Shown: piece by piece, positions 7,390 through 58,940 of the stretch | How the letters are laid out: every line of letters starts with the position of its first letter | Numbering within the stretch: the first letter of the stretch is position 1 | Origin: Selaginella moellendorffii | Lineage: Eukaryota > Plantae > Lycopodiophyta | DNA: 64,000 bases | Direction: 5' to 3' | Assembly: GCF_000143415.4 (NCBI RefSeq) | Contig: NW_003314317.1 | Coordinates: 788,296 to 852,295, forward strand | Notes under the pieces: model-generated | Database searches by the model: none | Seen by the model: only the letters and a program-made list of their open reading frames with translations | Told to the model about the DNA's origin: nothing | Made by a program: the position numbers and the translations under genes

Positions 7390-8605
7390 CTATGAGAGTG
7401 TGATGGTATACACTTGGGCCAGGCTGGGCTCAAACAGCCCAAAATTCCTCTCGGACACCGGCCCGGTCTTTTGGTCCTCGTTGAACAGCGCAAAAATGTA
7501 AGTCTCCGCCGTGACGCCGGGCCGCGCGGGAGTGCCCACACCAGACACCACATGCCGGATGAGATTCTGGTTGTACCGTGCGGCATTGGCGGTAGTGGCG
7601 CCGGGCTCGTCCCCCTTGCTAGGCCACCCGGTCTCGGTTACCACCACGGGCATATTCGGGTAGCCGAGCTTTGTGAGCGCTGACGTCACCGTGTCCACCA
7701 TTGCGTCATACATGTTGCTGTAGTGGAGGTTGGCGGGCGCGTCCGTGACGCCCGGGTCGGAGCCGAAGAGCGCGTATTCCAGCGGTACGTTGGTCGGGTC
7801 ACCGGCGTAGCTGAAGAAGGGATAGACGTTGATCATGAAGGGGCTGCCTGACGTGGACAGGAAATCCACCACTGGCTTGAGGGCGATGGTGGCGTTGAAG
7901 GCGCCGTTGGAGGGCGGGAAGGATGACGCGTCCATGACGTTGAAGGCGTGCGGCGTGGAGACCACGGTGCCGGCGGTACGCAGCGCGGTGTGCGACTGTA
8001 TCGCGGACTGGACGTTCTGGAGGGCCGGGAGGAGGAAGGGGGCGTACCGCGCGTTGTTTGTGAGGACCTCGTTGCCGATGGAGATGGCGGGGAAGCGGAC
8101 GGCGGGGATGAAAGGGGCGATGGAGGCGTCCAGCCAGGCCTTGGCGGCGGCGGGGCTGGAGGCGATTTGCTGGAGCTGCTCGTTGGGGATGGAGACGCTC
8201 AGATCGATGCCCGAGTTTGCGAAGGCCTGGATCACTGCGGGATCGGCGTCGAAGATGCGCGCCTTGGTTATGTTGTTGGATTTGAGCAGCGCCACGACTT
8301 GCGCCGGCGATGGGAGATTGTCGCCCAATCTCCCGTAGTTCACGCCGATGCTCGCTCCATCCGCGCCTGCCAAGAGAGGGGTCAAATCGAAACGCTCTGA
8401 TTCAACCAAGAGAGAGGAAGAGATCTAAAAATGTGACCGTTTTGTGTCTGGAAACGAAAATGCGAGAGCTGGAAGACGAGGAATCGTGGGGAATCTTGCC
8501 GAGAGGATCTATAAACTCACCAGAAATGCCCTCCAGCGCAGCCAAAGCCGCGACGAGCATCAGCACTATCACCAGCAGCCGATTGAATCCCACTCCCGCC
8601 TCCAT
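7390..8605 (-). CDS. Glucan endo-1,3-beta-glucosidase (GH17), 2 exons (8605-8521, 8366-7390)
   Basis: Signal-peptide exon MEAGVGFNRLLVIVLMLVAALAALEGIS, then IGVNYGRLGDNLPSP...IGNEV...INVYPFF...YSNMYDAMVD...VVTETGWPSKG...YIFALFNEDQKTGPVSERNFGLF. Confidence 0.95.
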
Positions 8606-20061: not shown

Positions 20062-20633
20062 CCCGCGCAACGCTAGCGCTCTCACATCCTGCCCAAAACG
20101 CGCGTCAGAGCTAGAACCCTAAAATTTCTTGCAAGAACTGGAGAAAGTGGGGAAGAAATCTCTCCAAGAAAACGCCCCCGGAGAGCTGGGAATCCCGAGA
20201 AGGAGCGCGGCTTGCTCACCTCGACATCCGGAGGACGCGCCAAGAAAATGCCGCAGAGATTAGGGCAAGAGATCCAGGAGAAGCGGCGATCGTAGCGCCG
20301 GCGTCACGAAGCATCCTTACTCAAGAACCCTGGATGGAAACCAAAGAGAAAAAAAATTTGATCCGAGAGAAGAGCTCCCACTGTGAGAAAGAGAAAAACA
20401 TTTCATTTATCTCGCCTAGTTTAAGCTACAAAATGCTTCGCATCTGCGCCGTCCGATGCCAAGCGGTACCAACGGCCACGATCCAGAGCGACATGGACGG
20501 ACGAGATTGAGGTGCAATCTTTCCGTTACAGTCGTGGCGAGTTCCCAGCCGTTATTTTTCTTGCCAGTTCCAAAGTTCTGGGCTAAAACGAAGAGTTTCA
20601 AACAAAACAAGTACCCATAGAACGATGAACGAT

Positions 20634-23600
20634 TCAAGGCACGTAAACAAAAGGCTCGGGAGGAGCTGGCTCCAAATCGACGCCTCCCATTGGGATTGGA
20701 GCGGCGGCGGGAGCTCCATTTGCTCCTCCTGCTGGAGCTGGCGACGCTGGCGAATCGGTGGAGACGAGCTCCACTGGCTCCGACGGCTCCAAGTCTCGCA
20801 GCATCACGAATCCCGCCGGAGTTCTCTTCACTGGAGCGTAGCGGCAGCCCTCCGGGAACCGGACATACTTCTCCTGGAGTGGGATCACTCGCGCTGGATT
20901 GCTCAAAACCTCGGAGGTGGCCTCGGGATTTACAGCCTTCTTCTCGACAGCACTGTCCACCTGGAACGGGATTCCAAAGTTTCAGCACAAGAACAAGAAC
21001 GGAAAGAGAGAGAGAGAGGAGAGATGGAGTTACCTCCATAGCCTCGCTGCCATCTTTCGCTGCTTCTTTCCCTGAGGACGATTCCTCCGGAGGTTCAGCA
21101 GTAGAAGCTGCTTCGGACGTGGCTGCCGTGGCACCTGTGCTACTGCCGACGTCCATCTGCGAGCTCGTATCAGGCTGCTTCTCTGCCTTCGTCTTCGCGT
21201 CTGTGTCTTTCTTTGCTTTCGACTTGGAGCGGCCGGACGTGGATAGAACCGCCGTGGGGAGCTTGATGTTCACGTTGACGGATGGAGGCGCTGTCGGCGC
21301 AGGATATGCAAACAACGCGGGCTTCGCATCAGAGATGATGTCAAACTTCGGCATCCTCAGCTCGTGGTTGAGTCCGATGAATGCTGTTGGTGCGAAAGAG
21401 AGGCTGACGAAGTACGTCAGCGGGTACCAGTACCAAAACTGGGTGAAAACGGCCATCCCCACGACTGCCATCACCCGGTCGTGACCAGTTCGCGACTGCA
21501 GAGATATGGTCACATTCCTGCCTCCGGCATCTAGTATACCATACGCCAGTATGGCTCCCATCTTGCTCATCGTGTCCTCGTGTTTGTCACTAACAATTTT
21601 GTCGAGTTGACGCCTGCGAGAGGAACATCACTTCTAAGCGTTATACTGCAAATAGCTGACAAACCTGAAAACAGCAACGTGAGGCTCTCGGGCTTCGGTA
21701 GCCTGCATCAGAACCATCGCCATAGCCATAAGTGCTCCCTGGCGAACAAAGTCCACAGCGTCTGACGTCAAAGGTTCCAGAAGCGAGATCGCCTCACTGG
21801 ACGCAGTTCCAGCACAGGAGATTCCGACAGCCATAGCCGCGCCGTAACGAACGTGAGCGTTGTACGACTCCGACAAAAGGGAGACAATTTTTGGAGTCTA
21901 AGAAAAAAAAGAAAAAGTTAGACGTCGTCATATGCAAGAGAAATAGTGAATCTTACCTGAGTAGGATCAGAACATAGCACGAATCCAAGAGCCAAAACTG
22001 CTGCTCTTCGGACATCGTCACTCACGTCCGAAACGGCAAAATGCAGCAGACGGCGGATAGCACTGTTGTTAGACGTGCCTCTATAAGCCAGAGCCAGGGC
22101 GTACATGCCACCATAGCGAAGAATAGGATCCTGATCCCTTGTCATCTGCTCGATCAAAGTATCTGCTTCTTCTTCACGACCATAGACAACCAGCGCTATT
22201 CCAAGAGCCAGCCCCCTTATAATCTTCTCGTGTTGTGTATCGTGAGCATACGTGAGCATTTCTCCGGCTTTATCGCTGGCGCTTCCAACCATAAGCAGAC
22301 CCATAGCAATCCCTGCCGCCTCGCCAGCGATGGCGCTGTCTGTATACAGTACATGTTTTATGTCTTCATAGATTTCATCGTCGGCAGTGCCCAGTGCGGC
22401 TAGTCCTAGTCCAAGACAAGCACCATGTTGGATCACCTGCATCACAAGTACCAAAACATTATTTACAAACGTCTTACTGAGAATGACGCTTACCTCATTG
22501 TTTGTTTTTCTCAAGCTTTCTAGTAAGAACGACTTGATTCCTTCACCGTGGTTAGCATGTATTAGTCCTAAAGCGTAAAGAGCTCCACCTTCCGAGTATG
22601 GACTTCCCCCACCAGTCCCACCATCTTGAGGTAGATATGGGGCCATTAAAGAGCGGCCCTGCTGCAAATGACCTCTGTGAATAACACCCAGCCCAGCCGT
22701 TGCACTAAACTTTGCCCAATTGGTGGCCCGACTCAGCCAATCCTAACAATATGCTCTTCAATCAGCCGCAGCATTAACAACAAAAAAAGAACGCTCACCA
22801 GATTATCGCGCAAAAACGTATCCACTGTTGTCCCCGCATGCATCAAAGCATTGGAGTATATTGTAGCGCTGTGACAAACACTGTTTCTCGTTTCAACTGA
22901 ATGCTTGATAGTCTTCAGAATAAGGAGGTCGGACCTGAAAACATAGCAGGCATAAGAATCGAGAAAGATAACAATGGTCTTACTTGTTACGGCTGTATAA
23001 AAACTGTAAAGTGAGATGGATAGGTGTTTCTCCAGAAAGAATGCCCTTCAATTTCCCCATCCTGTCGACATAGATATTATCCTGGGAATCCTCGACGTTA
23101 GTGGCTGCTTCTGCACTTGTTGAAACGTCCATCATTCCGTTTTGTTCTGTAGTTTCCGTATTTTCACCCCCGCCTGAACTACTTCCAGCCCGAGCCTCAG
23201 GCAAACGGTCCCTCACGTTTAGTAGGAACAGCTGATTCTCGTTTTCAAACAAATCGAAGGCGATCTGATAAGCCAAAAGTGCTTCGATCTGCCAATACGA
23301 GTAACAACTTCAGTATCAACGTTAACGGAAGCATTATTACCTTGTCTCCTTTGATAAGCTTGTCAAGAATATTAGCGACAGTTTGAGGATCATTTAGAAA
23401 CATTAGGCACTGGCAGACTGTGAGATAGTCCGGAGAATGGAGCCCCTGATGCTGGTTTACAATTAAACGGAGAACCTAGTCAAAGAAAAGGAAGAAAAGA
23501 TAGAAAAGGTTAGAGCTGAGTATGACAACACGGCTCGTTCACCTCTTGCCGAAACTCTCGCTTGTCAACATGAGTCCGAGCCAGCCGAAAGCAGTACGCA

Positions 23601-26892: not shown

Positions 26893-28320
26893 ATGGTCCC
26901 CGAGCCCACTCATAGCAGAGGCGAGGACGGCGAGAAGCTCGAGGAGGCATGGCGTATCGCCATGGATTTGTTCCTCGAGTGGGACGAGGAGCTCCCACTC
27001 GCCTGGAAAGCTTTTCTCCAGTACCCCAAGCCGCTGCCACAGCTCCCCCAGCAAGTCATCGACACATACCCCGCCGTCTCTCCGCCGCCACTCCCCGAGC
27101 TCTGCCCGCTCGACTTCGAGATGCGCTGCTGGGGTTCCTTCAAGCACGACATGGATCGCTGGCTGGACGAGCAGCCGGACGACGAGCAACGCCTGGCTCC
27201 GCCACCTTGTCCCGCATCAAACTTCCGCGACGTCCTGAGCTCCATGCTCCATATGTCTGGACAGATCGAAGGCGTCTGCTGCGCGGCTCTGGGATGCTAC
27301 CCCGACTTCATGAACCGAGATCGTTCTTGTGATTCTGGGCGTAGGATGCGGCTGGTTGGCGTCATGGCCATGGAGATCGATGCTGCGACACTGGAGATTC
27401 AAGTTGCGCGGCTATACTCCTATATGCTGCTCACCGATTGCTACTTCGGCCTTGTCTCGTGCTACACCCAGACCTTTGCTTGCAAGAGGCTGCCGGGGTT
27501 GGAGAGATGCGTGTGGGTCTCGCCTCCAGTTCTCTCCGACAGTGGCGACGCGCTCAAGGCCTGTGCTTTTGTGGCTTCGCTGAGCCAGAGCTTTTCTCTT
27601 GGAGAAACTCCAACTCTCCCAGAGCTCCGAGTTCCAACGTACTGCAACTTCTTCTTTGCGAGCAGCACGGGGCCTCGCCCGTTTGATCGCGCGCCGATCC
27701 TTGCAAGGCTCCGGGTGCTGGGGAAGGAGCTGAGTGTCGCAAACATGGACAAGCTCGTCGAGGGGCTTGCATGGCTGGATGAGATCGTGGGGCGAATGGA
27801 GCAGCCTTCGTTCTTTTCGCACACTCGGGGAAGGATCACAGCTATGGGGGTGTATAAGGGCGAGTTCGTGCTTGTCAAGTTCCGGGATCTCTCAAACAGC
27901 CGGTTCAAGGACACGGACTCGTACCTCCGGAAGTTCTTGCGCGAGGTGGACGTGTATATGAGGCTGCGCGAGTTGCAAGGCGAAGTGATCCCCGAGCTGC
28001 TCCAGTATGGATTCATCAGGGGGGCGATGGTGTGCTTTGTGGTCATCACGGACCACGGCCGCGCCGTGAGAATGAAACCATGGGAGCAGCGTTTCTACAA
28101 TGGTCCCGAGCTGTGGGAGCACAAGAGTAGCATGGTGAAGTCGTGCTTGCGCAGGGTTCATGCTCTCGGGGTGCACTTTGGGGGAGAGCCCCTGTGGCTG
28201 AAAAGCGATCGAGGGAGTGAGTATATACTCATTACTATGTCGCATGGTTTTGTGGATGGTGATCGTGCCGGCATGGCCAAGGATATTGAGTTCGTTAACA
28301 AGGTATACCCTCAGCCATGA
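26893..28320 (+). CDS. Intronless restriction-endonuclease-fold + atypical (pseudo)kinase protein
   Basis: YPDF...QVARLYSYM...YFGLVSCYTQTF...VWVSPP, then VLVKF...FLREVDVYMRLRELQGEVIPELLQYG...LRRVHALGVH. The HGD and DFG catalytic motifs are absent. Confidence 0.65.
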   Translation: MVPEPTHSRGEDGEKLEEAWRIAMDLFLEWDEELPLAWKAFLQYPKPLPQLPQQVIDTYPAVSPPPLPELCPLDFEMRCWGSFKHDMDRWLDEQPDDEQRLAPPPCPASNFRDVLSSMLHMSGQIEGVCCAALGCYPDFMNRDRSCDSGRRMRLVGVMAMEIDAATLEIQVARLYSYMLLTDCYFGLVSCYTQTFACKRLPGLERCVWVSPPVLSDSGDALKACAFVASLSQSFSLGETPTLPELRVPTYCNFFFASSTGPRPFDRAPILARLRVLGKELSVANMDKLVEGLAWLDEIVGRMEQPSFFSHTRGRITAMGVYKGEFVLVKFRDLSNSRFKDTDSYLRKFLREVDVYMRLRELQGEVIPELLQYGFIRGAMVCFVVITDHGRAVRMKPWEQRFYNGPELWEHKSSMVKSCLRRVHALGVHFGGEPLWLKSDRGSEYILITMSHGFVDGDRAGMAKDIEFVNKVYPQP

Positions 28321-28491: not shown

Positions 28492-30258
28492 TTAAATATT
28501 CAAAAAGAGCGCACTTAGTGATACTTCATCGGCCACGAAAGGCATTGTTGCAGCAAGCTCCATGGCCTCCTCGACACGCCCTGCCCTCGCAAGCACGTCC
28601 ACGTATCGATTGAAGTGCTCGCGGCTGGCCTGAATGCCCCCATCCCCTTGCATCGACGCCACACACTGCGCCGCCTCCTCCACAAGCCCGGCGTGGGCAA
28701 ATGCCGCCAACGCACTCAGGTAGCTTGCGCCGCTAGGGCTCCATCCCTCGAGCTCCATCGCTCGCAAAGCGCTCACGCAAAGATCCACCCGGCCATTGCG
28801 CGCATATCCCTCGATCATCGCGTTCCAGGAGGTGAGATCGTGGCGAAACTGGAGCCCGGAAAAGAGCCGCTCCGCCGTGTCAAAATGCCCATTCGCGGCA
28901 CTTGCGACGATCATTGCGTTTGCGGCAGCCGCGTCTCTGTGAGGCATTCGAGAGAAGAAATTCACCGCCTCTTCCCACGACTTACTCTCGCCAAATCCTG
29001 CGATCATGGTGTTCCACGACACAATGTTTCTATCTCTCATCTCATCAAACAAATCTTTGGCTTTGTGCATATCTCCCCTCTCGGCTAATGCCGCTAGCAT
29101 CATATTCCAACACACTGTCGGCGCACGCTCCTTGATCCCCTCGAATATCCTCTCCGCGCCGTACGCGTCGCCATGGCGGAGATATGCTTGGACCAGCGTG
29201 GTCTCGGCCACCGCGTCCCGTACGGGCATCTGATTGAACACCCACTGGGCTTGCGCCACGCGTCCGGCTAGAGCATATACCGAGAGCATCGCCTTCCACG
29301 CCACGATATTCCACTGGGGCATCCGCGCGTGTGTGTTCCTGGCGGATTCCACGCGGCCGTGGTGAGCGAATGAGGGGATCATCGCCGCCCAGCAAACAAG
29401 ATCCCGGCACGGCAATGCATCGAAGAGCTCCTTGGCGCGGATCAATCGGCTGGACAGCGCAGTTGCGACGATGACACAGGTCCAGGGCGCGGCTCCCTGC
29501 TGCGGCATTCGCTCGATAATCCCCTCCGCTCGATCGATCCTGCCACCGCCCGCCAGCGCCGCGACGATCGCGTTCCAGGCGGCGGGATTTCGCTGCGGCA
29601 TCGCGTCGAAAATCTCCATGGCCAGCTCCGGCAACGCGCTCTTTGCGACAAGATCCATCATCGCCGTCCAGGAAACAGTGCTGCGCTCCGGCATCGAGTG
29701 GAAGATGGCGCTGGCGCGGTCGAAATCCCCGGTGACGGCATAGGCCTGGAAGATCGAGTTCCAGGACACGAGATCCTGCGCGGGCATCCTCAAGAACATA
29801 TCAGCGGCCGTTTCCATCCGGCCAGCGCTGGCGAATGCCGTGATCATCGTCGTCCAGGAGACGATATTTCGCCCTGGCATCGATAGAAACGCTTGCTCCG
29901 CGTGATCGACGCAGCTGCCATGCGAGAAGGCGAGGATCAGAGCGTTCCAAGACGCGACGCTCGGGTCGGGGATCTGATCAAACAGCCACATTGCATTCTC
30001 CATTTGCCCTTTCCAGGCAAATGCCGCAAGGAGGGAGTTCCAAGACACCGAGTCTCTCTGGGGCATCTTGTCCAGAAACTCTCTGGCGGTGTCTAAGAAA
30101 CCTAGCTTCGCGTATGCTGTGATCATAGAGTTCCAGGATACCTCGTTACGGAGCTCCATGGAATCAAAGAGGGATTTGGACCACTGGAGATTCCCGCTTT
30201 GGGCATATGACGTTAGGAGAATATTCAATGCCTTTGTGCTGCGCCTATGTCCCAGCAT
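28492..30258 (-). CDS. PLS-class pentatricopeptide repeat protein (tandem ~31-aa motifs, truncated E domain, no DYW)
   Basis: Repeated VSWN.M..A.A..G....A...F..MP.R units. Ends EHFNRYVDVLARAGRVEEAMEL...MPF..DEVSLSALFLNI*. First ATG at 30258. Confidence 0.85.
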   Translation of the reverse strand: MLGHRRSTKALNILLTSYAQSGNLQWSKSLFDSMELRNEVSWNSMITAYAKLGFLDTAREFLDKMPQRDSVSWNSLLAAFAWKGQMENAMWLFDQIPDPSVASWNALILAFSHGSCVDHAEQAFLSMPGRNIVSWTTMITAFASAGRMETAADMFLRMPAQDLVSWNSIFQAYAVTGDFDRASAIFHSMPERSTVSWTAMMDLVAKSALPELAMEIFDAMPQRNPAAWNAIVAALAGGGRIDRAEGIIERMPQQGAAPWTCVIVATALSSRLIRAKELFDALPCRDLVCWAAMIPSFAHHGRVESARNTHARMPQWNIVAWKAMLSVYALAGRVAQAQWVFNQMPVRDAVAETTLVQAYLRHGDAYGAERIFEGIKERAPTVCWNMMLAALAERGDMHKAKDLFDEMRDRNIVSWNTMIAGFGESKSWEEAVNFFSRMPHRDAAAANAMIVASAANGHFDTAERLFSGLQFRHDLTSWNAMIEGYARNGRVDLCVSALRAMELEGWSPSGASYLSALAAFAHAGLVEEAAQCVASMQGDGGIQASREHFNRYVDVLARAGRVEEAMELAATMPFVADEVSLSALFLNI

Positions 30259-30289
30259 TGGATTTTCATTGAGTGAAAAAGCGTTGAGG

Positions 30290-30885
30290 ATTTCCTTCTC
30301 CGTGTGATAGCTCCGCAAAAATCAAACAATGAATTCTTCTCTACCAAAAACCACAGATTTAAATGAGTTTGATTTTTCCGAATAGATTGAAACGAGGAAT
30401 GCTGCTCGATTTCGGACCTGCCCAGGAGAGAAGAAAAGAAAAACGACGAGAAGCATGTAAGACGCAGAGAAATGCAAAAACCCTGTTGGCGAAAGTTCGA
30501 TAGTCTCCACAAAAGATCCCTTTTTTCCTCATCGATCATATCTCAAAACCAGCTCTATACCTGGACGAAATCCACAGTCTTTAAGATCGTAGCCTTCCAG
30601 TGCGAAGATCATCAGTGTTAAAACTCTAGAAAGCTGGAAATAATTTCTCAGACCTTGCAAGCGAGTGTGCGAGCACTCATCCTCGGTTAAGTAGTTGACA
30701 AGAAGCAGGATGCAGTATTAAATCGAGGAGAAAAAACGGAAGATGAAACTATAGTTCTCAGGTTCCGACTTCTGCAAGAAACTGATGAATCAAAACTAAT
30801 AGAGAGAATTACTAGTTTACAGTTCGGAAAAAATACGCCATCGTCCTCTAGCACGAAAAAAAGAAAACTTTGAGATTACCTCACC
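30290..30885 (-). pseudogene. Fragmented copy of the 3' part of the NSE6/CANIN-like gene
   Basis: Contains VRNRAAFLVSIYSEKS, gatcttcgcactggaaggctacgat and gaagtcggaacctgagaa, matching 24850-26460 with deletions. Confidence 0.85.
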
Positions 30886-33470: not shown

Positions 33471-34730
33471 ATTCAATGAAAATCCTGGAACAAAGGTGCA
33501 GCACAAATTGAATATTCTCCTAACGTCATATGCCCAAAGGTTCAGTGGTCCAAATCCCTCTTTGAATCCATGGAGCTGCTTAAGCGGCTGCGTCGATCAC
33601 GCGGAGCAAGCGTTTCTATCGATGCCAGGGCGAATATCGTCTCCTGGACGACGATGATCACGGCATTCGCTAGCGCTGGCCGGATGGAAACGGCCGCTGA
33701 TTTTTTCTTGAGGATGCCCGTGTCGTGGAACTCGCTCTTCCAGGCCTATGCCCGCGCCAGCGCCGTCTTGCACTGGATGCCGGAGCGCAGTACTGTCTCC
33801 TGGACGGCGATGATGGATCTTGTCGCAAAGACCGCAATGCCGGAGCTGATTTTCGACGCGATGCCGCAGCAAAATCCCACCGCCTGGAACGCGATCGAGG
33901 CGGCGCTAGCGGGCGGTGGCAGGATTGATCGAGCGGAGGGGATTATCGAGAGAATGCCGCAGCAAGGAGCCGCGCCATGGACCTGTGTCATCGTAGCAAC
34001 CACTGTCCGGCCGATTGATCCGCGCCAAGGAGCTCTTCGATGCATTGCCGTGCCGGGATCTTGTTTGCTGGGCGGTGATGATCTCCTCATTCGCTCACCA
34101 CGGCCGCCTGGAATCCTTCAAGAACACACGCGCGGATGCCCCAGTGGAATCTCGGCGTGGAAGCCTATGTAAGGTGACGCTAGTAACAACGGCCTAGTGA
34201 CGCTAGTAACAATGCCCGAGTGCTGACGTGGGCGTGCGGAGGAGGAGAAAAGCGATAGGCGTTAAGTGTGAACACATGAAGTGTTTTATAGTGTGTTCTT
34301 GTGCTTTAGAAATTAATCTCTCTTGGTTTCTTTGCTTGTGTCCGTGAATGGAGAGTCGGACCACTACAGCGATGCTCTTAGCATATACTCTAGCCGGACG
34401 CGTGGCGCAAGCCCAGTGGTTGTTCAATCAGCTGACCAACCGTATTTCCGCCATGGCGACGCGTACGGCGCGGAGAGGATGATTTGGCGAGAGTAAGCCG
34501 CGAAAAGAGGCGGTAAATGTCTTCTCTCGAATGCCTCACAGAGACGCGGCGCTGCCGCAAACGCAATGATCGTCGCAAGCGCCGCGAATGGGCATTTGGA
34601 CATGGCGGAGCGGCTCTTTCCTGGGCTCCAATTTCGCCACGATCTCACTCCTGGAACGCGATGATGAGCGAGGGATATGCTCGCAATGGCCGGGTTGCAA
34701 ACGATGGAGCTGCGATGGAGCCCTAGGGCT
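33470..34730 (+). pseudogene. PPR pseudogene (inverted, deleted copy of 28492-30318)
   Basis: Shares NIVSWTTMITAFASAGRMETAAD... and GGRIDRAEGIIERMPQQGAAPWTCVIV, with frameshifts, deletions and an insertion. Confidence 0.9.
34168..34368. mobile_element. 201-bp TG...CA insertion (short solo-LTR/TRIM-like)
   Basis: Absent from the parent PPR. Begins TGTAAG, ends ACTACA, and has an internal repeat gtgacgctagtaacaa x2. The TSD is not clean. Confidence 0.6.
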
Positions 34731-41461: not shown

Positions 41462-43179
41462 ATGGTTTGCGATGCTGGAATTCCACTGATCGATCTCGCT
41501 CCATTTTTCCAGGCCGAGGCTCCCGAGGTCTTGGAGCTCCGACGCCAGAGGATAGGAGAGATTGGAAATGCCTGCGAGGAGTGGGGATTCTTCCAGGTCC
41601 AGAACCACGGCCTGGATAGCAAGCTCATTACCGATTCCTTGAAAGTTTCCAGCGAGTTTTTCGATCTTCCGCTGGAGGAGAAGAGGAAGCTCTCGCTGCC
41701 GGCTGGAGTTTCGCCTGTCCCGATTGGATTTTGCTGTGATAGTGGCCTGGATGACAAGGTGGAGAACAAGGAACATATGTTCTTCTTTGCCGAGGATGGG
41801 AAGAAGGCGACCAAAAATGGTGGTAGCTACGCTCAATACAATGTCTGGCCTGACACTCCAGCGAGCTACAAGTAAGCAAAAAATGTCTCTTCCATTTTCT
41901 TTCTGGTCCACCATCTTTTTTCTCTATTCTTCTCGATTCTTCTCTTTTGTTTTGGTTGCTTCATGCTGTTTGATTGTTCGTGGAGTTCTCGCTTAAACTA
42001 TTCTTGTTGCTCGCTCGATCAATCTCTACCTTCTCATTTTTTAGTCTGGATTCTATGAGCGTGGGATGATGTTGTCATTTGCTTTTAGTTTTTTTTTCTT
42101 CTCTCTGTAGATAGATTATAAAGCTTCGCTTCGCTTTCTTCTTCTCTCTCGTCTCATCACGCTCACAGATATATTTTCCGGTTTCTGTTCTCTTTTTCCA
42201 CAGTTTTCGTACTGTCTAGATTGAGAATGACTGGTTGTCTGGTTGTTTTTCCTCTCTTCATAGGCCTATTATCAAGGACAGGCTTCTCAAGGAGACCCAA
42301 ACAACCGCAATCTTCTTGCTGAGCCTCATCTCCCAGAGCCTGGGCCTTTCAAAGGACTTCCTTTATGAGCACTACGAGGACAAACTCAACGCTTTGATAA
42401 TGCTCCACTATCCCCCGTCTCACTCCACCGACGAGATCGGCCTGTCCAAGCACCAGGACGGGAACATCCTCAGCGTTGTCGCACAGAGCGAGGTGGAAGG
42501 CCTCCAAATCCTCAAGGATGATAAGTGGATCACCATCCAGCCGCGACCAAACTGCCTTGTTGTCAACGTTGGTGATATAGTCCAGGTAAAATCTGCATAT
42601 GTGTCAAGCATAGTAATCAGGAAATCCCTTGATCCAATTCGATTCATGTTTTCATGGTTCTGATATGCTCTTCCCGTTCGTTCATATGCCTGCAGCACAA
42701 GCTCGAAAGTTCTTTGTTCTTCTTCGATCGATTGGTGTTCTTGATGCTCTTGAATGTTCTCTTTGTGATCATATCTCCTACGTGACGTGTTGTGGATATA
42801 AGTTCTTAGTTCTTGCTAGATGCATATTCGTTCAGAAAATTCGAAAGTTCTTGGTGCTCTTCGATTGTTCTTTCTGGATTAGAGTTTGATGCTTAAGTAT
42901 TCAGATATTTTCACACAGGTGTGGAGCAACGATCGCTACAAGAGTGTCTTACACCGCGTAATCAACAACAAGGCAGGGACTCGCTACTCTTTTTCTTTTT
43001 CGTGCGTTCCCGGAGTCACCACTCAAGTATGCCCACTGCCGCAGTTCACTGCAGGTGTCAACGAGCCGCCCAAGTACCGAGAGTTTCGATACGGCGAATA
43101 CATGATGTTCAGATTCGAAAACAAGAAGGTTGGAGGTCCCAACTCAGAGGAAATCACCATCAAATACTACGCAATATAA
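41462..43179 (+). CDS. 2-oxoglutarate/Fe(II)-dependent dioxygenase (DOXC type), exons 41462-41871, 42264-42585, 42919-43179
   Basis: IPLIDL...IGNACEEWGFFQVQNHG...EFFDLPLEEK; HYPP...GLSKHQDGNIL (HxD); EVEGLQI; VVNVGDIVQ|VWSNDRYKSVLHRV...RYS. Splice phases are consistent. Confidence 0.95.
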
Positions 43180-44279: not shown

Positions 44280-46400
44280 TTTTTTGCAAATTTTTAATTT
44301 TATTATTGGTTAAGTTTTATTTAATAAATAAATAAAAATAAAAATAACTATATATTTACAAATAATAAGGATCTTCTAGTCTACAACTGGTTCTTACAAC
44401 TCTACCATTTATATAAAAAGTTTAATGCTTACAAACATATCTATTTATTCCTATGACTTGTTGACCATGTCCCTGAGGGCAACCCCCATTTAATGGTGTA
44501 CATAAATCAGTCTCCTTGATTAAAAACCCATAACAATAAGATATAAGTGTCTTTATACCCTTCACTTTACCTTAGTAGAAGATTGAAACTTGAATTTAGC
44601 TTTGCTTTACTAGGGGGTTGGGATTTAAACCCAACCTCTGTAGATTATGTTTATGGATTTGACATCCCTTTAGGGAGCTGGGTGTAGCTCTTTATGCATT
44701 ATCGACCTAGCTAAACTTATATTAATTAGTTTACCTTTAATGCACCTTCGGGTCCTAATATATGACATTCCTCAATTTCATAAATGGATGCTTTAATTGA
44801 ACTTTGCATAAGTACATAAAATTTTACTTTGCAAAATTCCTCTATTAGATTTTGAGTGTTTGCCAGGTTATCTTTCGATTCCTATATTACTTTGCAAAGA
44901 GGAAATCCTTTTCATTTCATATGAAATTCTTTCACCTCACATCCTTGTTGTTTACTCTTGTATGCATTGAGGATGGCTTTAACTTTGTATTTCTCCTCCC
45001 TTTAAATAACCTTGGATAAAGGTCTTATTTAGTTTTTGTGAAGCAGATCCTTAAAGTACGGCCTAAGTAAGTTCATGTGGAATATCATCTTTAGTTATGT
45101 TTGGCTAGTGATACTTTCTCTTGAGTAAGCCCATTGTTTTAGGCATTCCACTGTGTTTTATAAAAGGTCCATCATGACACTTTTTTAATGTTACCTTCTT
45201 TAATTCCTATGGAATATACACCCTCATTTACTTATAATAAATGAGTCTATTGTATTTCATATAACCCATTTTCTCTTCTTTAAGTAACTTGACTCTTTAG
45301 TGGGCATCCTATGCCTTTTAGTTCCTTAATAACACTTCCTATGCTAGACCATCATCCTCATATGTGTAAACAACTAATGAAAACAATTTAGGAGATGATC
45401 CATGGAGTTCAAGTATAAAGGGAAAGGGCTTATAAATAAGAGGGTTAAGGGTCTTAAGATATACATTCTTGGGTTTGCTATGTTGAGTGACTTCCCGGGA
45501 AGTCCAAACTCAGAAACTTACATTGGGTTTTAAGTTCAACTTTGTTAGTTAGTTAAAGAAATCACACCATATATTAATTGATATCTGGCAGGTTTAGTTT
45601 ACTTTGGCTAAGTTCAACCCAAAGGGTAAAGTGTCAAGAGAGTGGGGCTTTTGGGAGAGCTACAACTCTTAACTTCCATTCACGAAAGCATAAACTTGTA
45701 GGGAAGCGTCATAGATTATAATCAATCAAAAACAATAATTTAAAAGACAATCCATGGAATTCAAATATAAAGGGAAAGGGCCTATGAATAAAAGTGCACC
45801 CCCTTTTTCAATCAGTTAATAGTTTTGGGATATTTGGAGTTAAATGTCTTTAGGTTTGAATAGTACTGGTTGAGTGACCTCCAACCCAATCCAAACTTAG
45901 GGGTTTACAATACATTGTTTGCACATTATCCCAAAAAATTGTTGTTACATTGAATATTGCTAATTTTAAGCTTGCTTTTTGACTTAGAGCATCTGCCACA
46001 ATATTGCTTTTCTCATGTTTATATAGAATTTCACAATTGAACTCAACTAAAGTATTGGCCCACTAACCTTGTTTTCCTCAGAAGTTAAAAAGCTATGATA
46101 AAAAGTGTTTTGTTGCCACATTATCCATATATGCTTTGAAGTGCCTCACAAAGTAATATCACTACTTTAAACACAAAAATATTGTCTTAGTTCCGAGTTG
46201 TCCTCTTGTGAACATCAAATTCAAGTAGGAGTATTTAACTTTACATTGCTTTACCTTTAGATCTTGGACCACTAGTCTTCAATCTCTTGAAGACTAGTGG
46301 GGGGTCTTAGTTCATACTTGGGAACTATTTGAAGGAACTTTTTCTTATAATGCTGGGACATAAAACAACACACCAAATGAATCCAGATGAGTAAAGACAA
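44280..46400. mobile_element. AT-rich degenerate element, possibly a LINE-like RT relic
   Basis: Faint LQRG...LSP...LFTL and FADD-like traces near 44890-45120; degenerate direct repeat 45380-45520 / 45730-45910. Confidence 0.3.
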
Positions 46401-47032
46401 CATTTTTTGTTTTTCACAGTTTATAATTTATATTATTGCTGAACTCATGCACCAGCACACGTCCACACGTTGCTATAGACTTCACTGCCACTAAAAAAAA
46501 ATAAAAAATCCAAATAAATAGTTGGATCTTGACAATCTTTAGAAGAGAAGTGTATGTTTCATTTCATTTTCGATTGAGAGAGGGGTGTTTTATATACGTG
46601 GTTGGTGTATGTAGTTGCTAGACTGTCTTGGGAAAGAGATCAGATTCGTTGAAAATTTTGTCTCCACTACTGCGTCATATTTCCATCTTGTTGCTTATCC
46701 AAGTACCACGTCAAGACTAAGATGGCAGTGTCCACAACTTTTGACAAAAAAATATTGACTCAATATCCCATGGATAGATTGACTCGAGATTTCTTACTTG
46801 GCTTTCTTTCTTTTTAATTTTTCATGTTCTAAATTCATTCTGGTCATTCTGGTCACTGCGAACGTTCAACAACTTTCCAGAAAAACATTAACATTTTCAG
46901 GGCATGAACACGTATATAGAGATCACAGAAGACTCATAGGACTCCACTCATCCGCTGTCAACCCAAATTTTCATGATTCGAGATGATCCCGTGGTTCTTC
47001 GAGAGCCGAGGCTAACTAACTTTGGCGATTCT

Positions 47033-47260
47033 TCAGCGGATGCAGCGGCTGCCATTCCCCTCGCTGATATCGATGGCATCTGTTGTCATACCCGTACCAA
47101 TTGCATTGCGCAGCGAAAACCATTCCAGTAACATCCTCTGTGTAGCGCTGCGCCATATCGGATTGATCGCTTGACAAGAGTTGATTGGAGCATCACAACC
47201 AGGCCTAGGCACACCTAGCGGTGGGAGTGGAGGTCGGGGGGATCACAAGGCACCAATGGA
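47033..47260 (-). pseudogene. Decayed paralog of the Trp-rich peptide gene
   Basis: Frameshifted pieces AQRY..RGCYWNGFRC, WYGYDNRCHRYQRG and NGSRCIR*. Confidence 0.7.
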
Positions 47261-47515
47261 TTGATTGAAAGTCGAGGGATTTGGAGAAGAGAGGAGGAGG
47301 AGCAAGAGAGATTCAGATATTTTATATCAAGGCCTGGACAATTTATATATTATTGCTGGAACTCATGCAATGCCATCCAGCATCGCATGATACATAAAAC
47401 ACGTTATCAGTGTCTTTATTCTTGTTTCCAGACCTTTGGCACTGCAGAATGATGAAATCAAAGGCAATTATGATGCTGATTCTTAACTTGGGCTTACCCC
47501 GTGAAACAAGAGGTT

Positions 47516-47713
47516 TCAGTTGCGCCAGCAGCGATTGTTGCGCCAGCTCCAACCCCTCTGGCAACGGTGGCAACTATTGTCATACCAATACCACCCCGAC
47601 TGGCAGCGCTGGGCAGCAGCCTTTGTGATTCCTCCCACGTCCACGCCCATGGCCAGCATCATCACAAACATGGCGAGCGCCAAAAACAACACGAAGAAAG
47701 CCTTGTTCTCCAT
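47516..47713 (-). CDS. Small secreted Cys/Trp/Arg-rich peptide (65-aa precursor)
   Basis: Signal peptide MENKAFFVLFLALAMFVMMLAMG; C-terminus QRCQSGWYWYDNSCHRCQRGWSWRNNRCWRN; TATAAATA at 47781-47774. Confidence 0.8.
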   Translation of the reverse strand: MENKAFFVLFLALAMFVMMLAMGVDVGGITKAAAQRCQSGWYWYDNSCHRCQRGWSWRNNRCWRN

Positions 47714-49599
47714 GATTTGCTGACAGACTAAGAGAAGAGAGAAGTGGTTGATCTGTGAGGCAGGAGGGGCTCATATTTATAGCTCGAGACAGCACACAAT
47801 GCTTAATGGAGTCTACAGAGTTGTCTTGGGATGGTAGTCCTTATCTTGTAGTAGAGCTCCGTGTTTGGGAATTTCTTCTCTTTTCTATACTGCTGGGATC
47901 CACATAATATCTTATGCGCTCTCCAACCCTTCAAATGAAGTTTTGATTTGTTTATCCAAAGTCAGTCACTTTAGCTCGCCATTCCTCTTCTACCGTTTCA
48001 TACTACAAGGTTGGAGATAGAGAAAGCCAAGGAATTTAGCTCGAAAGATCCTAGTGTTTGAAAGCGACACGTGTTCTTGTAAGCCTTGGCCTGTGAGTTG
48101 TTGGTGGTATTCCACTCTCTCAGTTATGTTGTTTCTTTGTCTCCATGCTCTCTCAGTCATCCGTCCATGGAACATTTCTTGTGAAACCATGCTGTTCTCA
48201 AAACGTAAACAAGTAAGTGCCCAGCAAATGTTGAACGGTTGGCTAACGTAGATTTGGTAGAGAGTGGACATCTAATTCTGGTTAGCTGATTAGACTAGCT
48301 AGAAGTGCATGCATATGGCTATGACTGAATCTCAGTGATTAGCTAGTAGATATGATAGGAGAAAGCTTCTATTTCTCAGCACCACCAACAGTGGCAGCAA
48401 CAGCATGAGCATGCCTATCATGCCTCTTCTTCATGGCAGTCCATTCCAGTTTTGCCCCCAATTACTTGCCCAATTCCAACAGCAATGCAGCAACACTATT
48501 ACACCCCTCTTCTGGTGCAACCAAACATTGCCTCTCCCTATACCCTGCAATGCATGGCTGAGGCCAAAGCATATGATGTGGCATGGTGATTTTGATGATA
48601 CTAGGCCTGATCCATCACCTACAGCTCATTCCGGGCCGGAAATGCCATAATCACCAAGCAGAGAGATTGCAGTAGCGCAATGCCACCAAGTGGATGGTTA
48701 TGCCTAAGCTCTGAGCCCACCTCCTCCGCCCTCTTCGCATTGTCACAAGACACTGTTTTGTAGCTTTTGCACGTCATTAGGGTATTGGGAGAGTGATGAT
48801 TTTGTTCTCACAAAGTTGCTGATAGTGCAACTCTTCACTAGAGAATGCTTAAGTCTTCAAGAAGCAGAGAAGGAGAACAGAGAACGTGCTGACCTATATT
48901 GGCAACCCTCACCAAGGCATTTGGCAAAACCAGCACATGTTTGCCAGCAAGTGATGCTCCACGTTTTCTTAAGGCATCATGATGTCTTTTGTAACACTAT
49001 GGTAGAGGCCATGTGCATATCCCACCACCTGCTATGAGAGATGGCCAAATTTCCACAATTTGTATGCAACTTATGAATTGTGAGCTTTTTGCCACTATCT
49101 GGAAAACCAGGAAACATCTTTGATTTTGAGGCCCTCTTTCTCCTGGCAAATAGTGGTCTACACTCAATGGGGGCATGTGACAATGCCTAGTGTGCTTGGA
49201 GTGACCTCTAGGCATCTACCAGCTTTGGCCTCCAAAGAAAATGTTGCTGCCATATGGCATGTCATGTAACAACACAACACCAACTGGCTCATCCAAGCTA
49301 TTGAAGGCTGCTTGACTGCTAGAAGCTTGGAGAATTAGAGGCATAGTTTCAGCAATTACTTACTCTAGGCATTTGATAGGAATTATGTGAGTTTTTTCTG
49401 GAATGGCATTTATGTATCCAAACTTTAGCAGGAACTGTAGCAAAGCTTGTCTAGAAGTATAAGGCAAGGAACTGGTTGCTTACCAGAAAGGGGTCCGGGC
49501 AAATCATGTGGTGCAATCAGCTGAGCTAGTCTTTGCCTTTTATCCTTTGTTATGAGATTTAGGAGCTACTACAATATGTGTTAGAACCTTGACACTTCT

Positions 49600-56783: not shown

Positions 56784-58819
56784 GACCTTACATTACTACA
56801 ATTTTATGTATCCTTTAAGTAGATAAATTAAGGTTTACTGAAGCTTTTTAATTTTATATTGATCCCAAGCGTATGGTAGATCACTGATTGTCATGCCATA
56901 CCAGTTTCTTCATCAGAATTAGTTTAATTTTAATTTACTTTAAGTTAATTTTAAAAGCCATGCTATAATACCAAATTTTACTCTTTTGAACTTGTTAGCT
57001 ATCACATTCAAAATTTAATACAAATTATATTCATTAATTATAAAATTAAAATAGGAAAAGCATGAAGTAATACAAATGTTTTTGGTTTGCTTAAGTGAAT
57101 TGGCAATGAGTATACTTAGAATTTAGTATATTCTACCATCTAAGATATTATATACATGTTTATATAAACACCCCCAAATATATTCTAACATATTCTACAA
57201 TCTAATGGCTGATATACATTTAGATTATCTAGTGTTTATTAGAATAAAAATATTTATAATTTATCAATTTTCTTGAACAAATTGTAAGCTTTCTTGTGGG
57301 TAATGCAAAATTCAAAGCTTGGTAGGGAAGCTCCCTCTTCACCATCAGTGAGGAGTACTGTAAGTTTGCAGCTTTTTATGTAGCCTTTCTATGAAGGATG
57401 TAAATGCAATATTTGTGGACATTCTAAACTAAATTAGCATCTTCTTATATGCAAAGTAAACAATTTTCAAAATTCAATTTTTTTTTACTATTATATGCTT
57501 TGAGGCCATCTAACAATTCCTCTAGACTCTTTCACTTTCTCTATCTTCATGATTTCTTTTGTAGATTCAGATTTTCCTAATATCTTCTTTAGTGCCCAAG
57601 ATCAGTGTATTCTCAAGATAATTATTATAAACTATGTATCTTTTGAATTTAAAATTATATAAAAAGATTCAAGTAATTATAAAAATTACTTATCAATTTC
57701 TAGACTTAAGTATATTTCAAGGCTATAAACAGTTTTAGATCTTGATAATAGAATAATCTACATAATTTATATAATTGGTACAAAAACACTAACCAAGCGT
57801 CACACAGAAAAGTTTTTGAATTAATACCTGCACTCCACTTTATTATTTTTATTTAATGAAATTGACTATTACTACTTATAAATTTGAAAATATTCTAATA
57901 TTTCATAGTTTTCTATACATAATTTTTTTTAATCTACTAAAGCTGTTTTTTGGTTTGCTTAAGCAAACATGTAGTGAATATACTTAGAATATTGAATTTT
58001 TTTTCTTCCATCTAAAAACTTAGATTAATTTTATGTTTATAAATTATAAAACCAAAGTTTTGTGTTTTATTATAAACATCTAAGTTGCAACTTCCATGAC
58101 ACTAGCATGGCCAACTTGTAGCCCCCATGTCCTCAAACAACCCTAGCCACCATCACGGCTAGGCCTACCTTCTCAAGCTTTACTACTGAATGGTTTGTGG
58201 ACAGGTTACTAACCATTGATTGCTTTTCTTTTTTAAAATCTGTTGGCTGGTGGTGCACCAAGATTACAGCCCAATCTCACAATGAAGGAACTATTACCTC
58301 ATCCCATATCCTATTTATAATAGATTCAAAATTATAAATAATCTACTTACCGCCCCCGCCTTGCTTCCTCCTCGTCGGGCTCCTTGCAATAGTGGCGAAA
58401 CGGAACTAACAAGCCACGCTCTTTATGCCAAGAGCTGGGATCAAGTTCGTCATTCGGATGATCCCACTCAACGATGACCTCTGCATTGGCCCTGTGGATG
58501 CGTTGTCGTGGCAGTATGACGTGGCAGATTTGACAACGTGGAGGATGACGCAATTAAGAACCAGCGCAGGAGTTCTTCGGGGTACGTTTGTAGCCGTCAT
58601 CAAGCCTAGCAGCCTGGGTGGATCTGAGAGCAGCTGCATTTCAAAGTGCGTGGGCCGCAACATCGAAGCTACCGGGATTGTGAGCAAAGCCCTCTTCAAC
58701 GCTGCCGCCAAGAGAGTGAGTGAGTCATGCTCTTTCTCTCGATCCAATCCGTTTTGCCTTTATCTCCGATCCTTGGTCTTTAGACATTCCAACAAGTATA
58801 AATGTGCCAGTCGTGGTTT

Positions 58820-58940
58820 CGGATGGTGTGCAAGGAGAGAGCGTCGGTGATCTAGGACGAGCTCTTCCGGACGAGGACTTCCACCAGGCGGTGGTGCTCG
58901 TCTTTGCCAACAAGCAGGATGCTATGGCTCCCGCGGTGCA
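58820..58940 (+). pseudogene. ARF/ARL small GTPase fragment
   Basis: DEDFHQAVVLVFANKQD.AM (G4 NKxD in ARF context); no P-loop nearby. Confidence 0.65.

What the first reader, a model, noticed from the sequence alone, without database searches (positions are those of the whole stretch)
46420..47830. Secreted Trp/Arg-rich CxxGWxWxxxxC repeat peptide with decayed tandem paralogs
Seen: a signal peptide and short linker, then a 31-aa tail with 4 Cys, 5 Trp and 6 Arg, built from two 14-aa units (CQSGWYWYDNSCHR / CQRGWSWRNNRCWR), with a TATA box ~60 bp upstream. A frameshifted paralog with apparently three units lies at 47033-47260. Matching 3'-flank text (tatattattgctg.aactcatgca at ~46430 and ~47348) suggests a further lost copy. 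I do not recognise this Cys spacing as defensin, thionin, hevein, snakin or hairpinin. Inference: a modular disulfide beta-hairpin antimicrobial or glycan-binding peptide family under birth-and-death evolution, small enough for annotation to miss.
Basis: partly seen in the sequence, partly recalled or inferred. Interest (0 to 1): 0.8.

Follow-up and report, generated by a model that had tools for sequence, protein, structure and literature searches.

The report
Spikemoss secreted double-hairpin peptide gene
This stretch of spikemoss (Selaginella moellendorffii) DNA holds one intact, unannotated gene for a tiny, secreted, positively charged peptide predicted to fold into two tryptophan-rich, disulfide-stapled hairpins, next to a decayed copy. 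It is another member of a plant peptide family not described in the papers searched; it probably acts in defence or surface binding, but its function is untested and no transcript of this copy is on record.

Summary
Window 47516-47713 (-) is a 65-codon ORF: signal peptide, short linker, then a 31-residue tail with 4 Cys, 5 Trp, 6 Arg and net charge about +5. The tail is two 14-residue C-x2-G-W-x-W-x4-C units. These are the only two strict motif hits in the window; shuffles gave none. Third-position GC (0.76) matches real neighbouring genes. A TATA box, a good start context, AATAAA and a canonical 56-nt intron after the stop are present.

A decayed, frameshifted copy lies about 500 bp downstream. 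Only one unit there is clear, not three. The 24-nt flank match is real.

The genome is Selaginella moellendorffii. One homologue was found: the first 51 residues of a chimeric RefSeq pectinesterase model. AlphaFold predicts two beta-hairpins (pLDDT 83). Their shape resembles TNF-receptor and ephrin-receptor-like cysteine-rich repeats, but no Pfam family matches.

This scan found the same family at least eight times on other pieces of this genome. This copy is a diverged extra member. Unlike what those notes report, no transcript or protein record exists for it.

Most likely it is a real secreted defence or binding peptide gene. Function and expression are untested.

The parts
47774..47781 (-). 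TATA box (TATAAATA), 61-68 nt upstream of the start codon
   Evidence: sequence
47516..47713 (-). Gene A coding sequence, 65 codons plus TGA stop (47516-47518). Start context is A at -3 and G at +4.
   Evidence: GC by codon position 0.45/0.48/0.76, like neighbouring real genes
47645..47713 (-). Signal peptide, residues 1-23: MENK, an 18-residue hydrophobic core, then A-M-G. Cleavage after G23 is the most likely site; A34 is an alternative.
   Evidence: hydropathy and -3/-1 rule computed; no SignalP available
47612..47644 (-). Linker or possible propeptide, residues 24-34 (VDVGGITKAAA). This is the best conserved stretch between family members.
   Evidence: conserved in P0002; inverted relic LAVGVEVGGITR
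47564..47605 (-). Hairpin unit 1, C37-R50. Predicted strands are W41-Y44 and S47-R50, with the turn at D45-N46.
47522..47563 (-). Hairpin unit 2, C51-R64. Predicted strands are W55-R58 and R61-R64, with the turn at N59-N60.
47442..47497 (-). Candidate 56-nt intron (GTAAGC...TCTGCAG) starting 18 nt after the stop codon, at a codon boundary of the coding frame. Predicted from signals only.
   Evidence: The donor is lost in copy B (CACGGGATC against CACGGGGTAAGC), alignment.
47343..47441 (-). Second exon / 3' untranslated region, with AATAAA at 47415-47420. In the coding phase it reads CQRSG...SCDAGWHCMSSSNNI and then a stop, so it may be a relic of former repeat units. It includes the 24-nt flank motif at 47346-47369.
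   Evidence: (14-mer score 28, rank 7 of 127,918)
47016..47148 (-). Copy B, a decayed paralog: one clear unit (47073-47114), a partial next unit with Cys replaced by Tyr, and frame changes. It has no start codon or signal peptide in this orientation.
47215..47250 (+). Inverted fragment of the signal-peptide end and linker; reads LAVGVEVGGITR on the plus strand
   Evidence: 76% over 34 nt, inverted
46429..46451 (-). Second copy of the 3' flank motif. It is the end of the second-exon relic, belonging either to copy B or to a lost third copy.
   Evidence: reads ...CWCMSS... against ...WHCMSS... in gene A

Best explanation
Gene A (47516-47713, minus strand) is a real, intact, unannotated gene of Selaginella moellendorffii. 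It belongs to a genus- or lineage-restricted family of tiny secreted cysteine-rich peptides.

Shown:
- The precursor has a classical signal peptide, a short conserved linker, and a 31-residue Arg-rich tail with net charge about +5.
- The tail is predicted to fold as two tandem beta-hairpins.

Inferred:
- Each hairpin is stapled by one disulfide (C37-C48 and C51-C62).
- The invariant Gly-Trp-x-Trp packs against that disulfide to make a tiny hydrophobic core.
- The variable x positions and the turns (Tyr, His, Arg, Asn) point outward and form the working surface.
- After export to the cell wall space, the cationic, aromatic surface binds negatively charged or sugar-rich microbial or wall surfaces. 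That makes it a defence-type peptide: antimicrobial, or microbe/glycan binding.

The neighbouring copy B is a dead tandem duplicate. The locus therefore shows the gain-and-loss turnover typical of defence peptide families.
For: The ORF and motif are well beyond chance: 2 strict hits against 0 in 200 shuffles. Codon-position GC is 0.76 at third positions, against 0.70-0.83 in five real neighbouring genes. TATA box, AATAAA and a canonical short intron are present. Signal-peptide features are present.

A homologue exists elsewhere in the same species. Residues 1-51 of XP_024531936.1 (P0002) are 57% identical over 46 residues, with database-wide E 2e-7 against 1.8 billion representatives. The Cys, Gly, Trp and linker residues are conserved while the loop residues vary.

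AlphaFold without an alignment gives the same two hairpins in the 65-mer and in the 35-mer, with pLDDT 79 and 83. Shape matches point to disulfide-hairpin repeat domains.

Under neutral change at 15% per site, the ORF plus the 10 key residues survive in only 0.2% of simulations, whereas copy B did decay. The species was confirmed.

A 2026 review finds Arg over Lys, Trp in strands and Asn/Arg in loops typical of beta-hairpin antimicrobial peptides (PMC13001179). Earlier notes of this scan report the same family on at least eight other pieces.
Against: There is no expression evidence for this copy. The exact protein is not among about 15 billion sequences, and nothing of 36-114 residues shares three 5-residue words with it. 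So no assembled transcript product of this gene or of a near-identical allele is on record.

Only one homologue could be retrieved here, and it sits in a chimeric gene model. Fold matches are weak in absolute terms (Foldseek E above 2, Z at most 3.0), as expected for 35 residues. If the conserved Trp residues are buried on the disulfide, the analogy with Trp/Arg-rich membrane-active peptides weakens. Function is pure inference.
Confidence: 0.6

Rival explanations
1. The gene is structurally intact but silent or dying. It would be a recent non-functional member of the family that has not yet picked up a disabling mutation.
For: No protein or transcript-derived ORF of this copy or a close allele is on record, whereas earlier notes call other members strongly transcribed. 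The gene sits in an AT-rich, gene-poor stretch of about 15 kb next to a dead copy. The second exon looks like decayed former coding sequence.
Against: All 4 Cys, both Gly and all 4 core Trp are kept. Start, stop, TATA box and splice signals are intact. Gene-like third-position GC is kept. Neutral drift at the A-B divergence level would rarely allow this.
Confidence: 0.2
2. It is a secreted signalling ligand, read by a receptor kinase in development or reproduction, and not a defence molecule. EPF, LURE and RALF peptides are examples of cysteine-rich ligands of this kind.
For: It has the same general design: a signal peptide and a small disulfide-rich mature peptide with variable exposed residues on a conserved scaffold. 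The fold resembles receptor-type cysteine-rich modules.
Against: There is no sequence match to any known ligand family. Tandem amplification with many decayed copies is more typical of defence genes. No partner is evident next to it; the nearest receptor kinase is 32 kb away.
Confidence: 0.12
3. It is a chance open reading frame or a fragment of a repeat element, and not a gene.
For: It is short, unannotated and has no transcript record.
Against: The motif statistics, the codon-position GC, the signal peptide, the homologue with conserved structural residues and the confident fold all argue against it.
Confidence: 0.03

Closest known systems
Other Selaginella moellendorffii Trp-hairpin repeat peptide genes: earlier notes of this scan, and the first 51 residues of RefSeq XP_024531936.1
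   Same: The signal peptide, the conserved GVDVGGI..AAAQ(Q)RC linker and the R-C-Q-x-G-W-x-W-x-x-N-x-C unit are shared. This copy has the two-unit, 31-residue mature form and sits beside a decayed copy.
   Different: It shares no three 5-residue words with any same-length protein in the database and is 57% identical to its one retrieved homologue. It lies on another scaffold as a single intact copy. No transcript is on record here.
TNF-receptor-type, ephrin-receptor-like (PF07699) and class-C GPCR (NCD3G) cysteine-rich repeats
   Same: The predicted shape is the same: tandem short beta-hairpins, each with a Cys-x2-Gly-aromatic start and a disulfide to the second strand. TM by query is 0.73 with rmsd 1.9 A over all 35 residues for an ephrin-receptor-like model. 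4-1BB, HVEM, CaSR, mGluR and EphA2 are the top solved matches.
   Different: There is no sequence-profile match even at E 10. Those repeats are parts of large animal receptors. This is a free 31-residue peptide, much richer in Trp and Arg, in a plant.
Beta-hairpin antimicrobial peptides: tachyplesin and arenicin in animals; only Ib-AMP and RCB-1 in plants (PMC13001179)
   Same: It is small, cationic and disulfide-stapled, with Arg favoured over Lys, Trp in the strands and Asn in the turns.
   Different: Those peptides are single hairpins cyclised by one or two disulfides across the two strands. Here there are two tandem hairpins, each probably with one disulfide reaching from an N-terminal arm. 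There is no sequence similarity, and activity is untested.
N-terminal hairpin of long-form C-type lectin domains (e.g. snake agglucetin, 6xfq)
   Same: It has the same C-x2-G-W-x7-C spacing, followed by an aromatic or basic residue (CLPGWSAYDQSCYR against CQSGWYWYDNSCHR).
   Different: The E-value is 4.1, which is not significant. The rest of the lectin domain is absent.
Environmental microbial or viral surface proteins with the motif EEC..AGWYWYDN.CH(RC) (P0003, P0006, P0007, P0004; loci L001-L005)
   Same: There is an identical 10-residue core, GWYWYDNSCH. In the 83-85-residue proteins a second C-x2-G-aromatic-x-W hairpin follows after H-R. Database-wide E is 2e-4.
   Different: The Cys spacing is x11 and x12, not x10. 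They are acidic, not basic. They are membrane-anchored or part of large Ig-like-domain proteins. Shared ancestry and convergence cannot be told apart here.

Membership tests
Selaginella secreted Trp-hairpin repeat peptide family (unnamed; known from this scan and one RefSeq model) | N-terminal signal peptide followed by a short conserved linker | tested here: met
   The hydrophobic core spans residues 5-22, with A-M-G and A-A-A cleavage motifs. The linker is conserved with P0002.
Selaginella secreted Trp-hairpin repeat peptide family (unnamed; known from this scan and one RefSeq model) | Tandem 14-residue units R-C-Q-x-G-W-x-W-x-x-N-x-C | tested here: met
Selaginella secreted Trp-hairpin repeat peptide family (unnamed; known from this scan and one RefSeq model) | Significant sequence similarity to another member | tested here: met
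   P0002 residues 8-52: E 2e-7 against 1.8 billion representatives, 57-59% identity.
Selaginella secreted Trp-hairpin repeat peptide family (unnamed; known from this scan and one RefSeq model) | Transcribed (reported for other members in earlier notes) | tested here: not met
   The exact product is not on record, and no similar protein of 36-114 residues is in the collection. Raw reads could not be mapped, so weak expression is not excluded.
Ephrin-receptor-like / TNF-receptor-type cysteine-rich repeats (PF07699, PF00020, NCD3G) | Match to the family profile | tested here: not met
   There is no Pfam hit at E up to 10 except DUF4215 at E 0.2.
Ephrin-receptor-like / TNF-receptor-type cysteine-rich repeats (PF07699, PF00020, NCD3G) | Fold of stacked disulfide hairpins | tested here: inconclusive
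   The hit lists are consistent, but the scores are weak for a 35-residue model: TM by query 0.73, Z at most 3.0, Foldseek E above 2.
Ephrin-receptor-like / TNF-receptor-type cysteine-rich repeats (PF07699, PF00020, NCD3G) | Disulfide pairing of consecutive Cys (1-2, 3-4) closing each hairpin | not testable with these tools
Disulfide mapping by mass spectrometry or NMR is needed.
Beta-hairpin antimicrobial peptides | A single hairpin cyclised by cross-strand disulfides | tested here: not met
   Two tandem hairpins are predicted, and the first Cys of each unit lies four residues before its strand.
Beta-hairpin antimicrobial peptides | Cationic, with microbicidal activity | not testable with these tools
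   Net charge of about +5 was computed. Activity needs an assay.
Classical plant cysteine-rich antimicrobial peptides (defensin, thionin, hevein, snakin/GASA, alpha-hairpinin, LTP, knottin) | Family profile match or the family's Cys pattern | tested here: not met
   No Pfam family matches. From established knowledge, the C-x10-C-x2-C-x10-C pattern fits none of their patterns.
C-type lectin domain | A full lectin domain beyond the N-terminal hairpin | tested here: not met
   Only a 17-residue hairpin aligns, at E 4.1. The peptide is too short to hold the domain.

The most novel reading that the evidence does not exclude
The family, this copy included, may be a lycophyte-specific class of plant host-defence or recognition peptides with a design not yet described in plants. 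In this design, free tandem single-disulfide hairpins keep Trp residues as a miniature core and present hypervariable residues outward. The module may share ancestry with a GWYWYDNxCH hairpin found in environmental microbial or viral surface proteins.
Probability: 0.3. Interest if true: 0.65.

Novelty: new variant of a known kind. Interest (0 to 1): 0.5.

Why it matters
Small secreted cysteine-rich peptides are central to plant immunity and cell-to-cell signalling, but almost all known families come from seed plants. A 2026 review lists only two plant beta-hairpin antimicrobial peptide families, both from flowering plants (PMC13001179).

A lycophyte family that standard annotation misses would add an early-diverging vascular-plant case. 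It is built from a minimal, confidently foldable 14-residue hairpin and evolves by tandem gain and loss. It would also offer a very small, modular scaffold for peptide engineering.

This particular locus adds three things: a diverged member, a clear intact/dead pair for studying turnover, and a caution that not every intact copy has expression evidence.

Tried and rejected
- The word-indexed homologue search with the 65-mer found nothing.
- Exact look-ups of the peptide among 15 billion proteins and 153 billion gene positions found nothing.
- The locus of P0002 could not be fetched. So there was no DNA of a second family member and no dN/dS.
- My last homologue search used an alignment of gene A, copy B and P0002. 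It was swamped by pectinesterases and gave no new family member. That was a poor choice of query.
- The ESM Atlas search by features gave no usable hit.
- The JGI metagenome scan returned only microbial surface proteins related to P0004, plus one chance match in L006.
- The PDB sequence search gave only non-significant hairpin matches.
- NCBIfam and PHROGs gave nothing for the peptide or its microbial look-alikes.
- tblastn of the P0002 pectinesterase part found no such gene in the window. This locus is therefore not the P0002 locus.
- Literature searches for the motif, and for Selaginella cysteine-rich or Trp-rich secreted peptides, found no description.
- Rejected: membership of defensin, thionin, hevein, snakin or alpha-hairpinin families (no profile match).
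- Rejected: the 'three units' reading of copy B (the third unit is not above background).
The coding sequence lies in one exon, and exon 2 was translated only separately.
Full report
**What is there**

On the minus strand, 47713-47516 is a 65-codon ORF. It begins with MENK and an 18-residue hydrophobic core, followed by small-residue cleavage motifs (A-M-G at residue 23, A-A-A at residue 34). A conserved linker follows, and then a 31-residue tail with 4 Cys, 5 Trp, 6 Arg and net charge about +5.

The tail is two 14-residue units of the form C-x2-G-W-x-W-x4-C-x2. In the register beginning at the preceding Arg they share 8 of 14 residues and 26 of 42 nt, so the tail arose by internal duplication. 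The strict pattern occurs only twice in the six-frame translation of all 64 kb, both times here. It never occurred in 200 block-shuffled windows.

**Is it a gene?**

GC by codon position is 0.45/0.48/0.76. Five bona fide genes in the same window have third-position GC of 0.70-0.83, while the flanks are 37-42% GC.

- TATAAATA lies 61-68 nt upstream of the ATG.
- The start context is A at -3 and G at +4.
- The predicted leader has no upstream ATG.
- AATAAA lies at 47420-47415.

A canonical 56-nt GT...AG intron (47497-47442) starts 18 nt after the stop codon. It is predicted from signals only.

After that intron the sequence stays open in the coding phase. It reads CQRSG... and later SCDAGWHCMSSSNNI before a stop. 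The latter 14-mer ranks 7th of 127,918 against the unit template. So the 3' untranslated exon may be a relic of former repeat units. This is suggestive only.

**The neighbours**

Copy B is real but badly decayed.

- Its best DNA match to gene A is 70% over 67 nt (47034-47099).
- One unit, AAQCNWYGYDNRCH (47073-47114), stands far above background: score 54, against 39 for the next best hit elsewhere.
- The next unit has Tyr in place of the first Cys and then runs out of register.

Copy B has no start codon or signal peptide in the same orientation. Instead, 34 nt of the signal/linker region lie inverted at 47215-47248. The splice donor is lost in B.

The 24-nt flank motif (47346-47369 against 46429-46451, 23 of 24 aligned positions, one a gap) is the end of the second-exon relic. 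In the lower copy it lies about 560 nt below B's hairpin remnant. Two readings fit equally well: B carries an insertion of about 450 nt, or the motif is all that remains of a third copy. I cannot tell them apart.

No further copy exists in the window. Gene A sits in an AT-rich, gene-poor stretch of about 15 kb, between a 2OG-Fe(II) oxygenase gene (about 42 kb) and a Tim10-like ORF (about 58 kb).

**Organism and relatives**

The window ORF 26893-28317 is exactly present in NCBI. Its 90% cluster mate is EFJ32966.1 of Selaginella moellendorffii. The peptide's one clear homologue is also from that species.

An exhaustive phmmer run over 1.84 billion representatives gave five hits. Two of them (P0001, P0005) are long repetitive proteins with no hairpin motif.

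The one clear homologue is P0002 = XP_024531936.1, 'putative pectinesterase 11'. Its first 51 residues are a family member: same signal peptide, same GVDVGGI..AAAQQRC linker, one full unit and the start of a second. Identity is 57% over 46 residues. From residue 52 on it is identical to a second model of the same pectinesterase, P0008, which has its own signal peptide. The RefSeq model is therefore a chimera that swallowed a family member's first exon.

Between gene A and P0002 the Cys, Gly, Trp and linker residues are kept while the loop residues differ. A crude neutral simulation shows that the ORF plus the ten key residues survive in only 0.2% of runs at 15% substitution per site. Gene A has therefore been under constraint for much of the time since it split from B.

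**Expression**

This is the weak point. The exact 65-residue product is not among about 15 billion proteins, nor on any indexed contig. No protein of 36-114 residues shares three 5-residue words with it. So neither this gene nor a near-identical allele has an assembled transcript product on record.

Earlier notes of this scan describe other members as strongly transcribed. I could not test that. It does not transfer to this copy.

**Structure**

AlphaFold2 without any alignment predicts the same two beta-hairpins in the full precursor (pLDDT 78.8) and in the 35-residue mature part (pLDDT 83.0). The strands are W41-Y44/S47-R50 with turn D45-N46, and W55-R58/R61-R64 with turn N59-N60.

From this register I infer the following:

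- W41, W43, C48 and R50 share one face of hairpin 1; W55, W57, C62 and R64 share one face of hairpin 2.
- The first Cys of each unit lies four residues before its strand.
- The likely pairing is therefore C37-C48 and C51-C62, with the conserved G-W-x-W packed on the disulfide.
- The variable residues are exposed on the other face and in the turns.

Shape searches give weak but coherent results.

- Foldseek/PDB: mGluR and CaSR cysteine-rich domains, EphA2 CRD, 4-1BB, TNFR1 and BCMA, all at E above 2.
- VIA-align over 48,161 chains: Meckelin, 4-1BB, CaSR, HVEM, RANK and EDAR, with Z of 2-3.
- ESM Atlas: an ephrin-receptor-like (PF07699) model at TM 0.73 and rmsd 1.9 A over all 35 residues, then NCD3G and BCMA.

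The building block is therefore the familiar Cys-x2-Gly-aromatic disulfide hairpin of receptor cysteine-rich repeats. From my own knowledge it looks like the single-disulfide 'A1' module of TNF receptors. The same spacing also occurs in the N-terminal hairpin of C-type lectins (E 4.1, not significant).

No Pfam or NCBIfam profile matches. Similarity is in shape, not membership.

**An unexpected look-alike**

Two independent groups of environmental proteins carry the identical core GWYWYDN[SA]CH.

- The first group is 83-85-residue, membrane-anchored, acidic proteins (P0003, P0006, P0007). Here H-R-C and a second G-Y-x-W hairpin follow the core.
- The second group is large Ig-like-domain surface proteins with three copies of the module (P0004, L004, L005).

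Database-wide E is 2e-4 for each group.

Their Cys spacing (x11, x12), charge and context differ from the plant peptide. The contig of P0007 looks viral, with many short co-directional genes and PHROG hits. Convergence on a stable Trp/Tyr hairpin is the simpler reading, but shared ancestry is not excluded.

**Function**

Nothing tests it. The design is secreted, small, disulfide-stapled and Arg-rich, with Asn turns. That fits the composition trends of beta-hairpin antimicrobial peptides. A 2026 review lists only Ib-AMP and RCB-1 for plants in that class (PMC13001179).

Tandem gain and loss also fits defence genes. Exposed Tyr, Trp and Arg would equally suit sugar binding. A weak CBM14 hit of the microbial look-alikes (E 0.007-0.01, below threshold) is only a hint in that direction.

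My estimates are:

| Reading | Probability |
|---|---|
| Real secreted defence or binding peptide gene | about 0.6 |
| Intact but silent relic | about 0.2 |
| Signalling ligand | about 0.12 |
| Chance ORF | about 0.03 |

**Novelty**

No paper found describes the motif or the family. The family is a new variant of a known kind: plant secreted cysteine-rich peptides built from a known hairpin module.

This scan had already noted the family at least eight times on other pieces of the same genome. The present locus is a diverged extra member with one dead neighbour.

Noticed in passing
window 47343-47441 (-) and 46429-46500 (-): After the candidate intron, gene A's 3' exon stays open in the coding phase and reads CQRSG... 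then SCDAGWHCMSSSNNI and a stop. The conserved 24-nt flank motif is the end of this stretch. It may be a relic of further hairpin units lost behind a stop codon.
   Followed up: partly
window 47215-47250 (+): An inverted 34-36-nt fragment of the signal-peptide end and linker (LAVGVEVGGITR) abuts the decayed copy B. This points to a rearrangement and not a simple tandem duplication.
   Followed up: partly
P0002 (XP_024531936.1) and P0008 (SELMODRAFT_94715), another S. moellendorffii scaffold: The RefSeq model 'putative pectinesterase 11' is a chimera. Its first 51 residues are a hairpin-family first exon. The older model of the same pectinesterase has its own signal peptide and is identical from GRREDDD onward.
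   Followed up: yes
L001 2624-2875; L003 5014-5268; L002 309-2054; L004 571-3741; L005 3-1115: Environmental microbial or viral proteins carry the same GWYWYDN[SA]CH hairpin core as the plant peptide. One group is small, acidic and membrane-anchored with two hairpins. The other is large Ig-like-domain surface proteins with three C-x6-C-x5-C-x11-C-H modules. No Pfam or NCBIfam family covers the module.
   Followed up: partly
L003 (Logan SRR16071516 contig, 17 kb): About 25 mostly short, co-directional, tightly packed genes with PHROG hits (phrog_9224 and a D5-like regulator), a transglutaminase-core protein and DUF2341. It looks like a virus or mobile element of a prokaryote.
   Followed up: no
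window 46269-46300: A perfect 14-nt inverted repeat with a 4-nt spacer (CCACTAGTCTTCAA / TTGAAGACTAGTGG) lies just below the gene cluster. Its meaning is unknown.
   Followed up: no
window 7390-8409, 13578-15494, 20416-21570, 28492-30318, 33570-34172, 42235-42663, 58425-58850: Ordinary plant genes surround the locus: GH17 glucanase, L-type lectin receptor kinase, RPN2 C-terminal exon, two PPR genes, a 2OG-Fe(II) oxygenase exon and a Tim10-like zinc finger.
   Followed up: partly
window 26893-28320 (+): A 475-residue ORF with no Pfam domain is annotated in NCBI as a hypothetical protein. The cluster mate on the other scaffold (probably the other haplotype) is EFJ32966.1.
   Followed up: no
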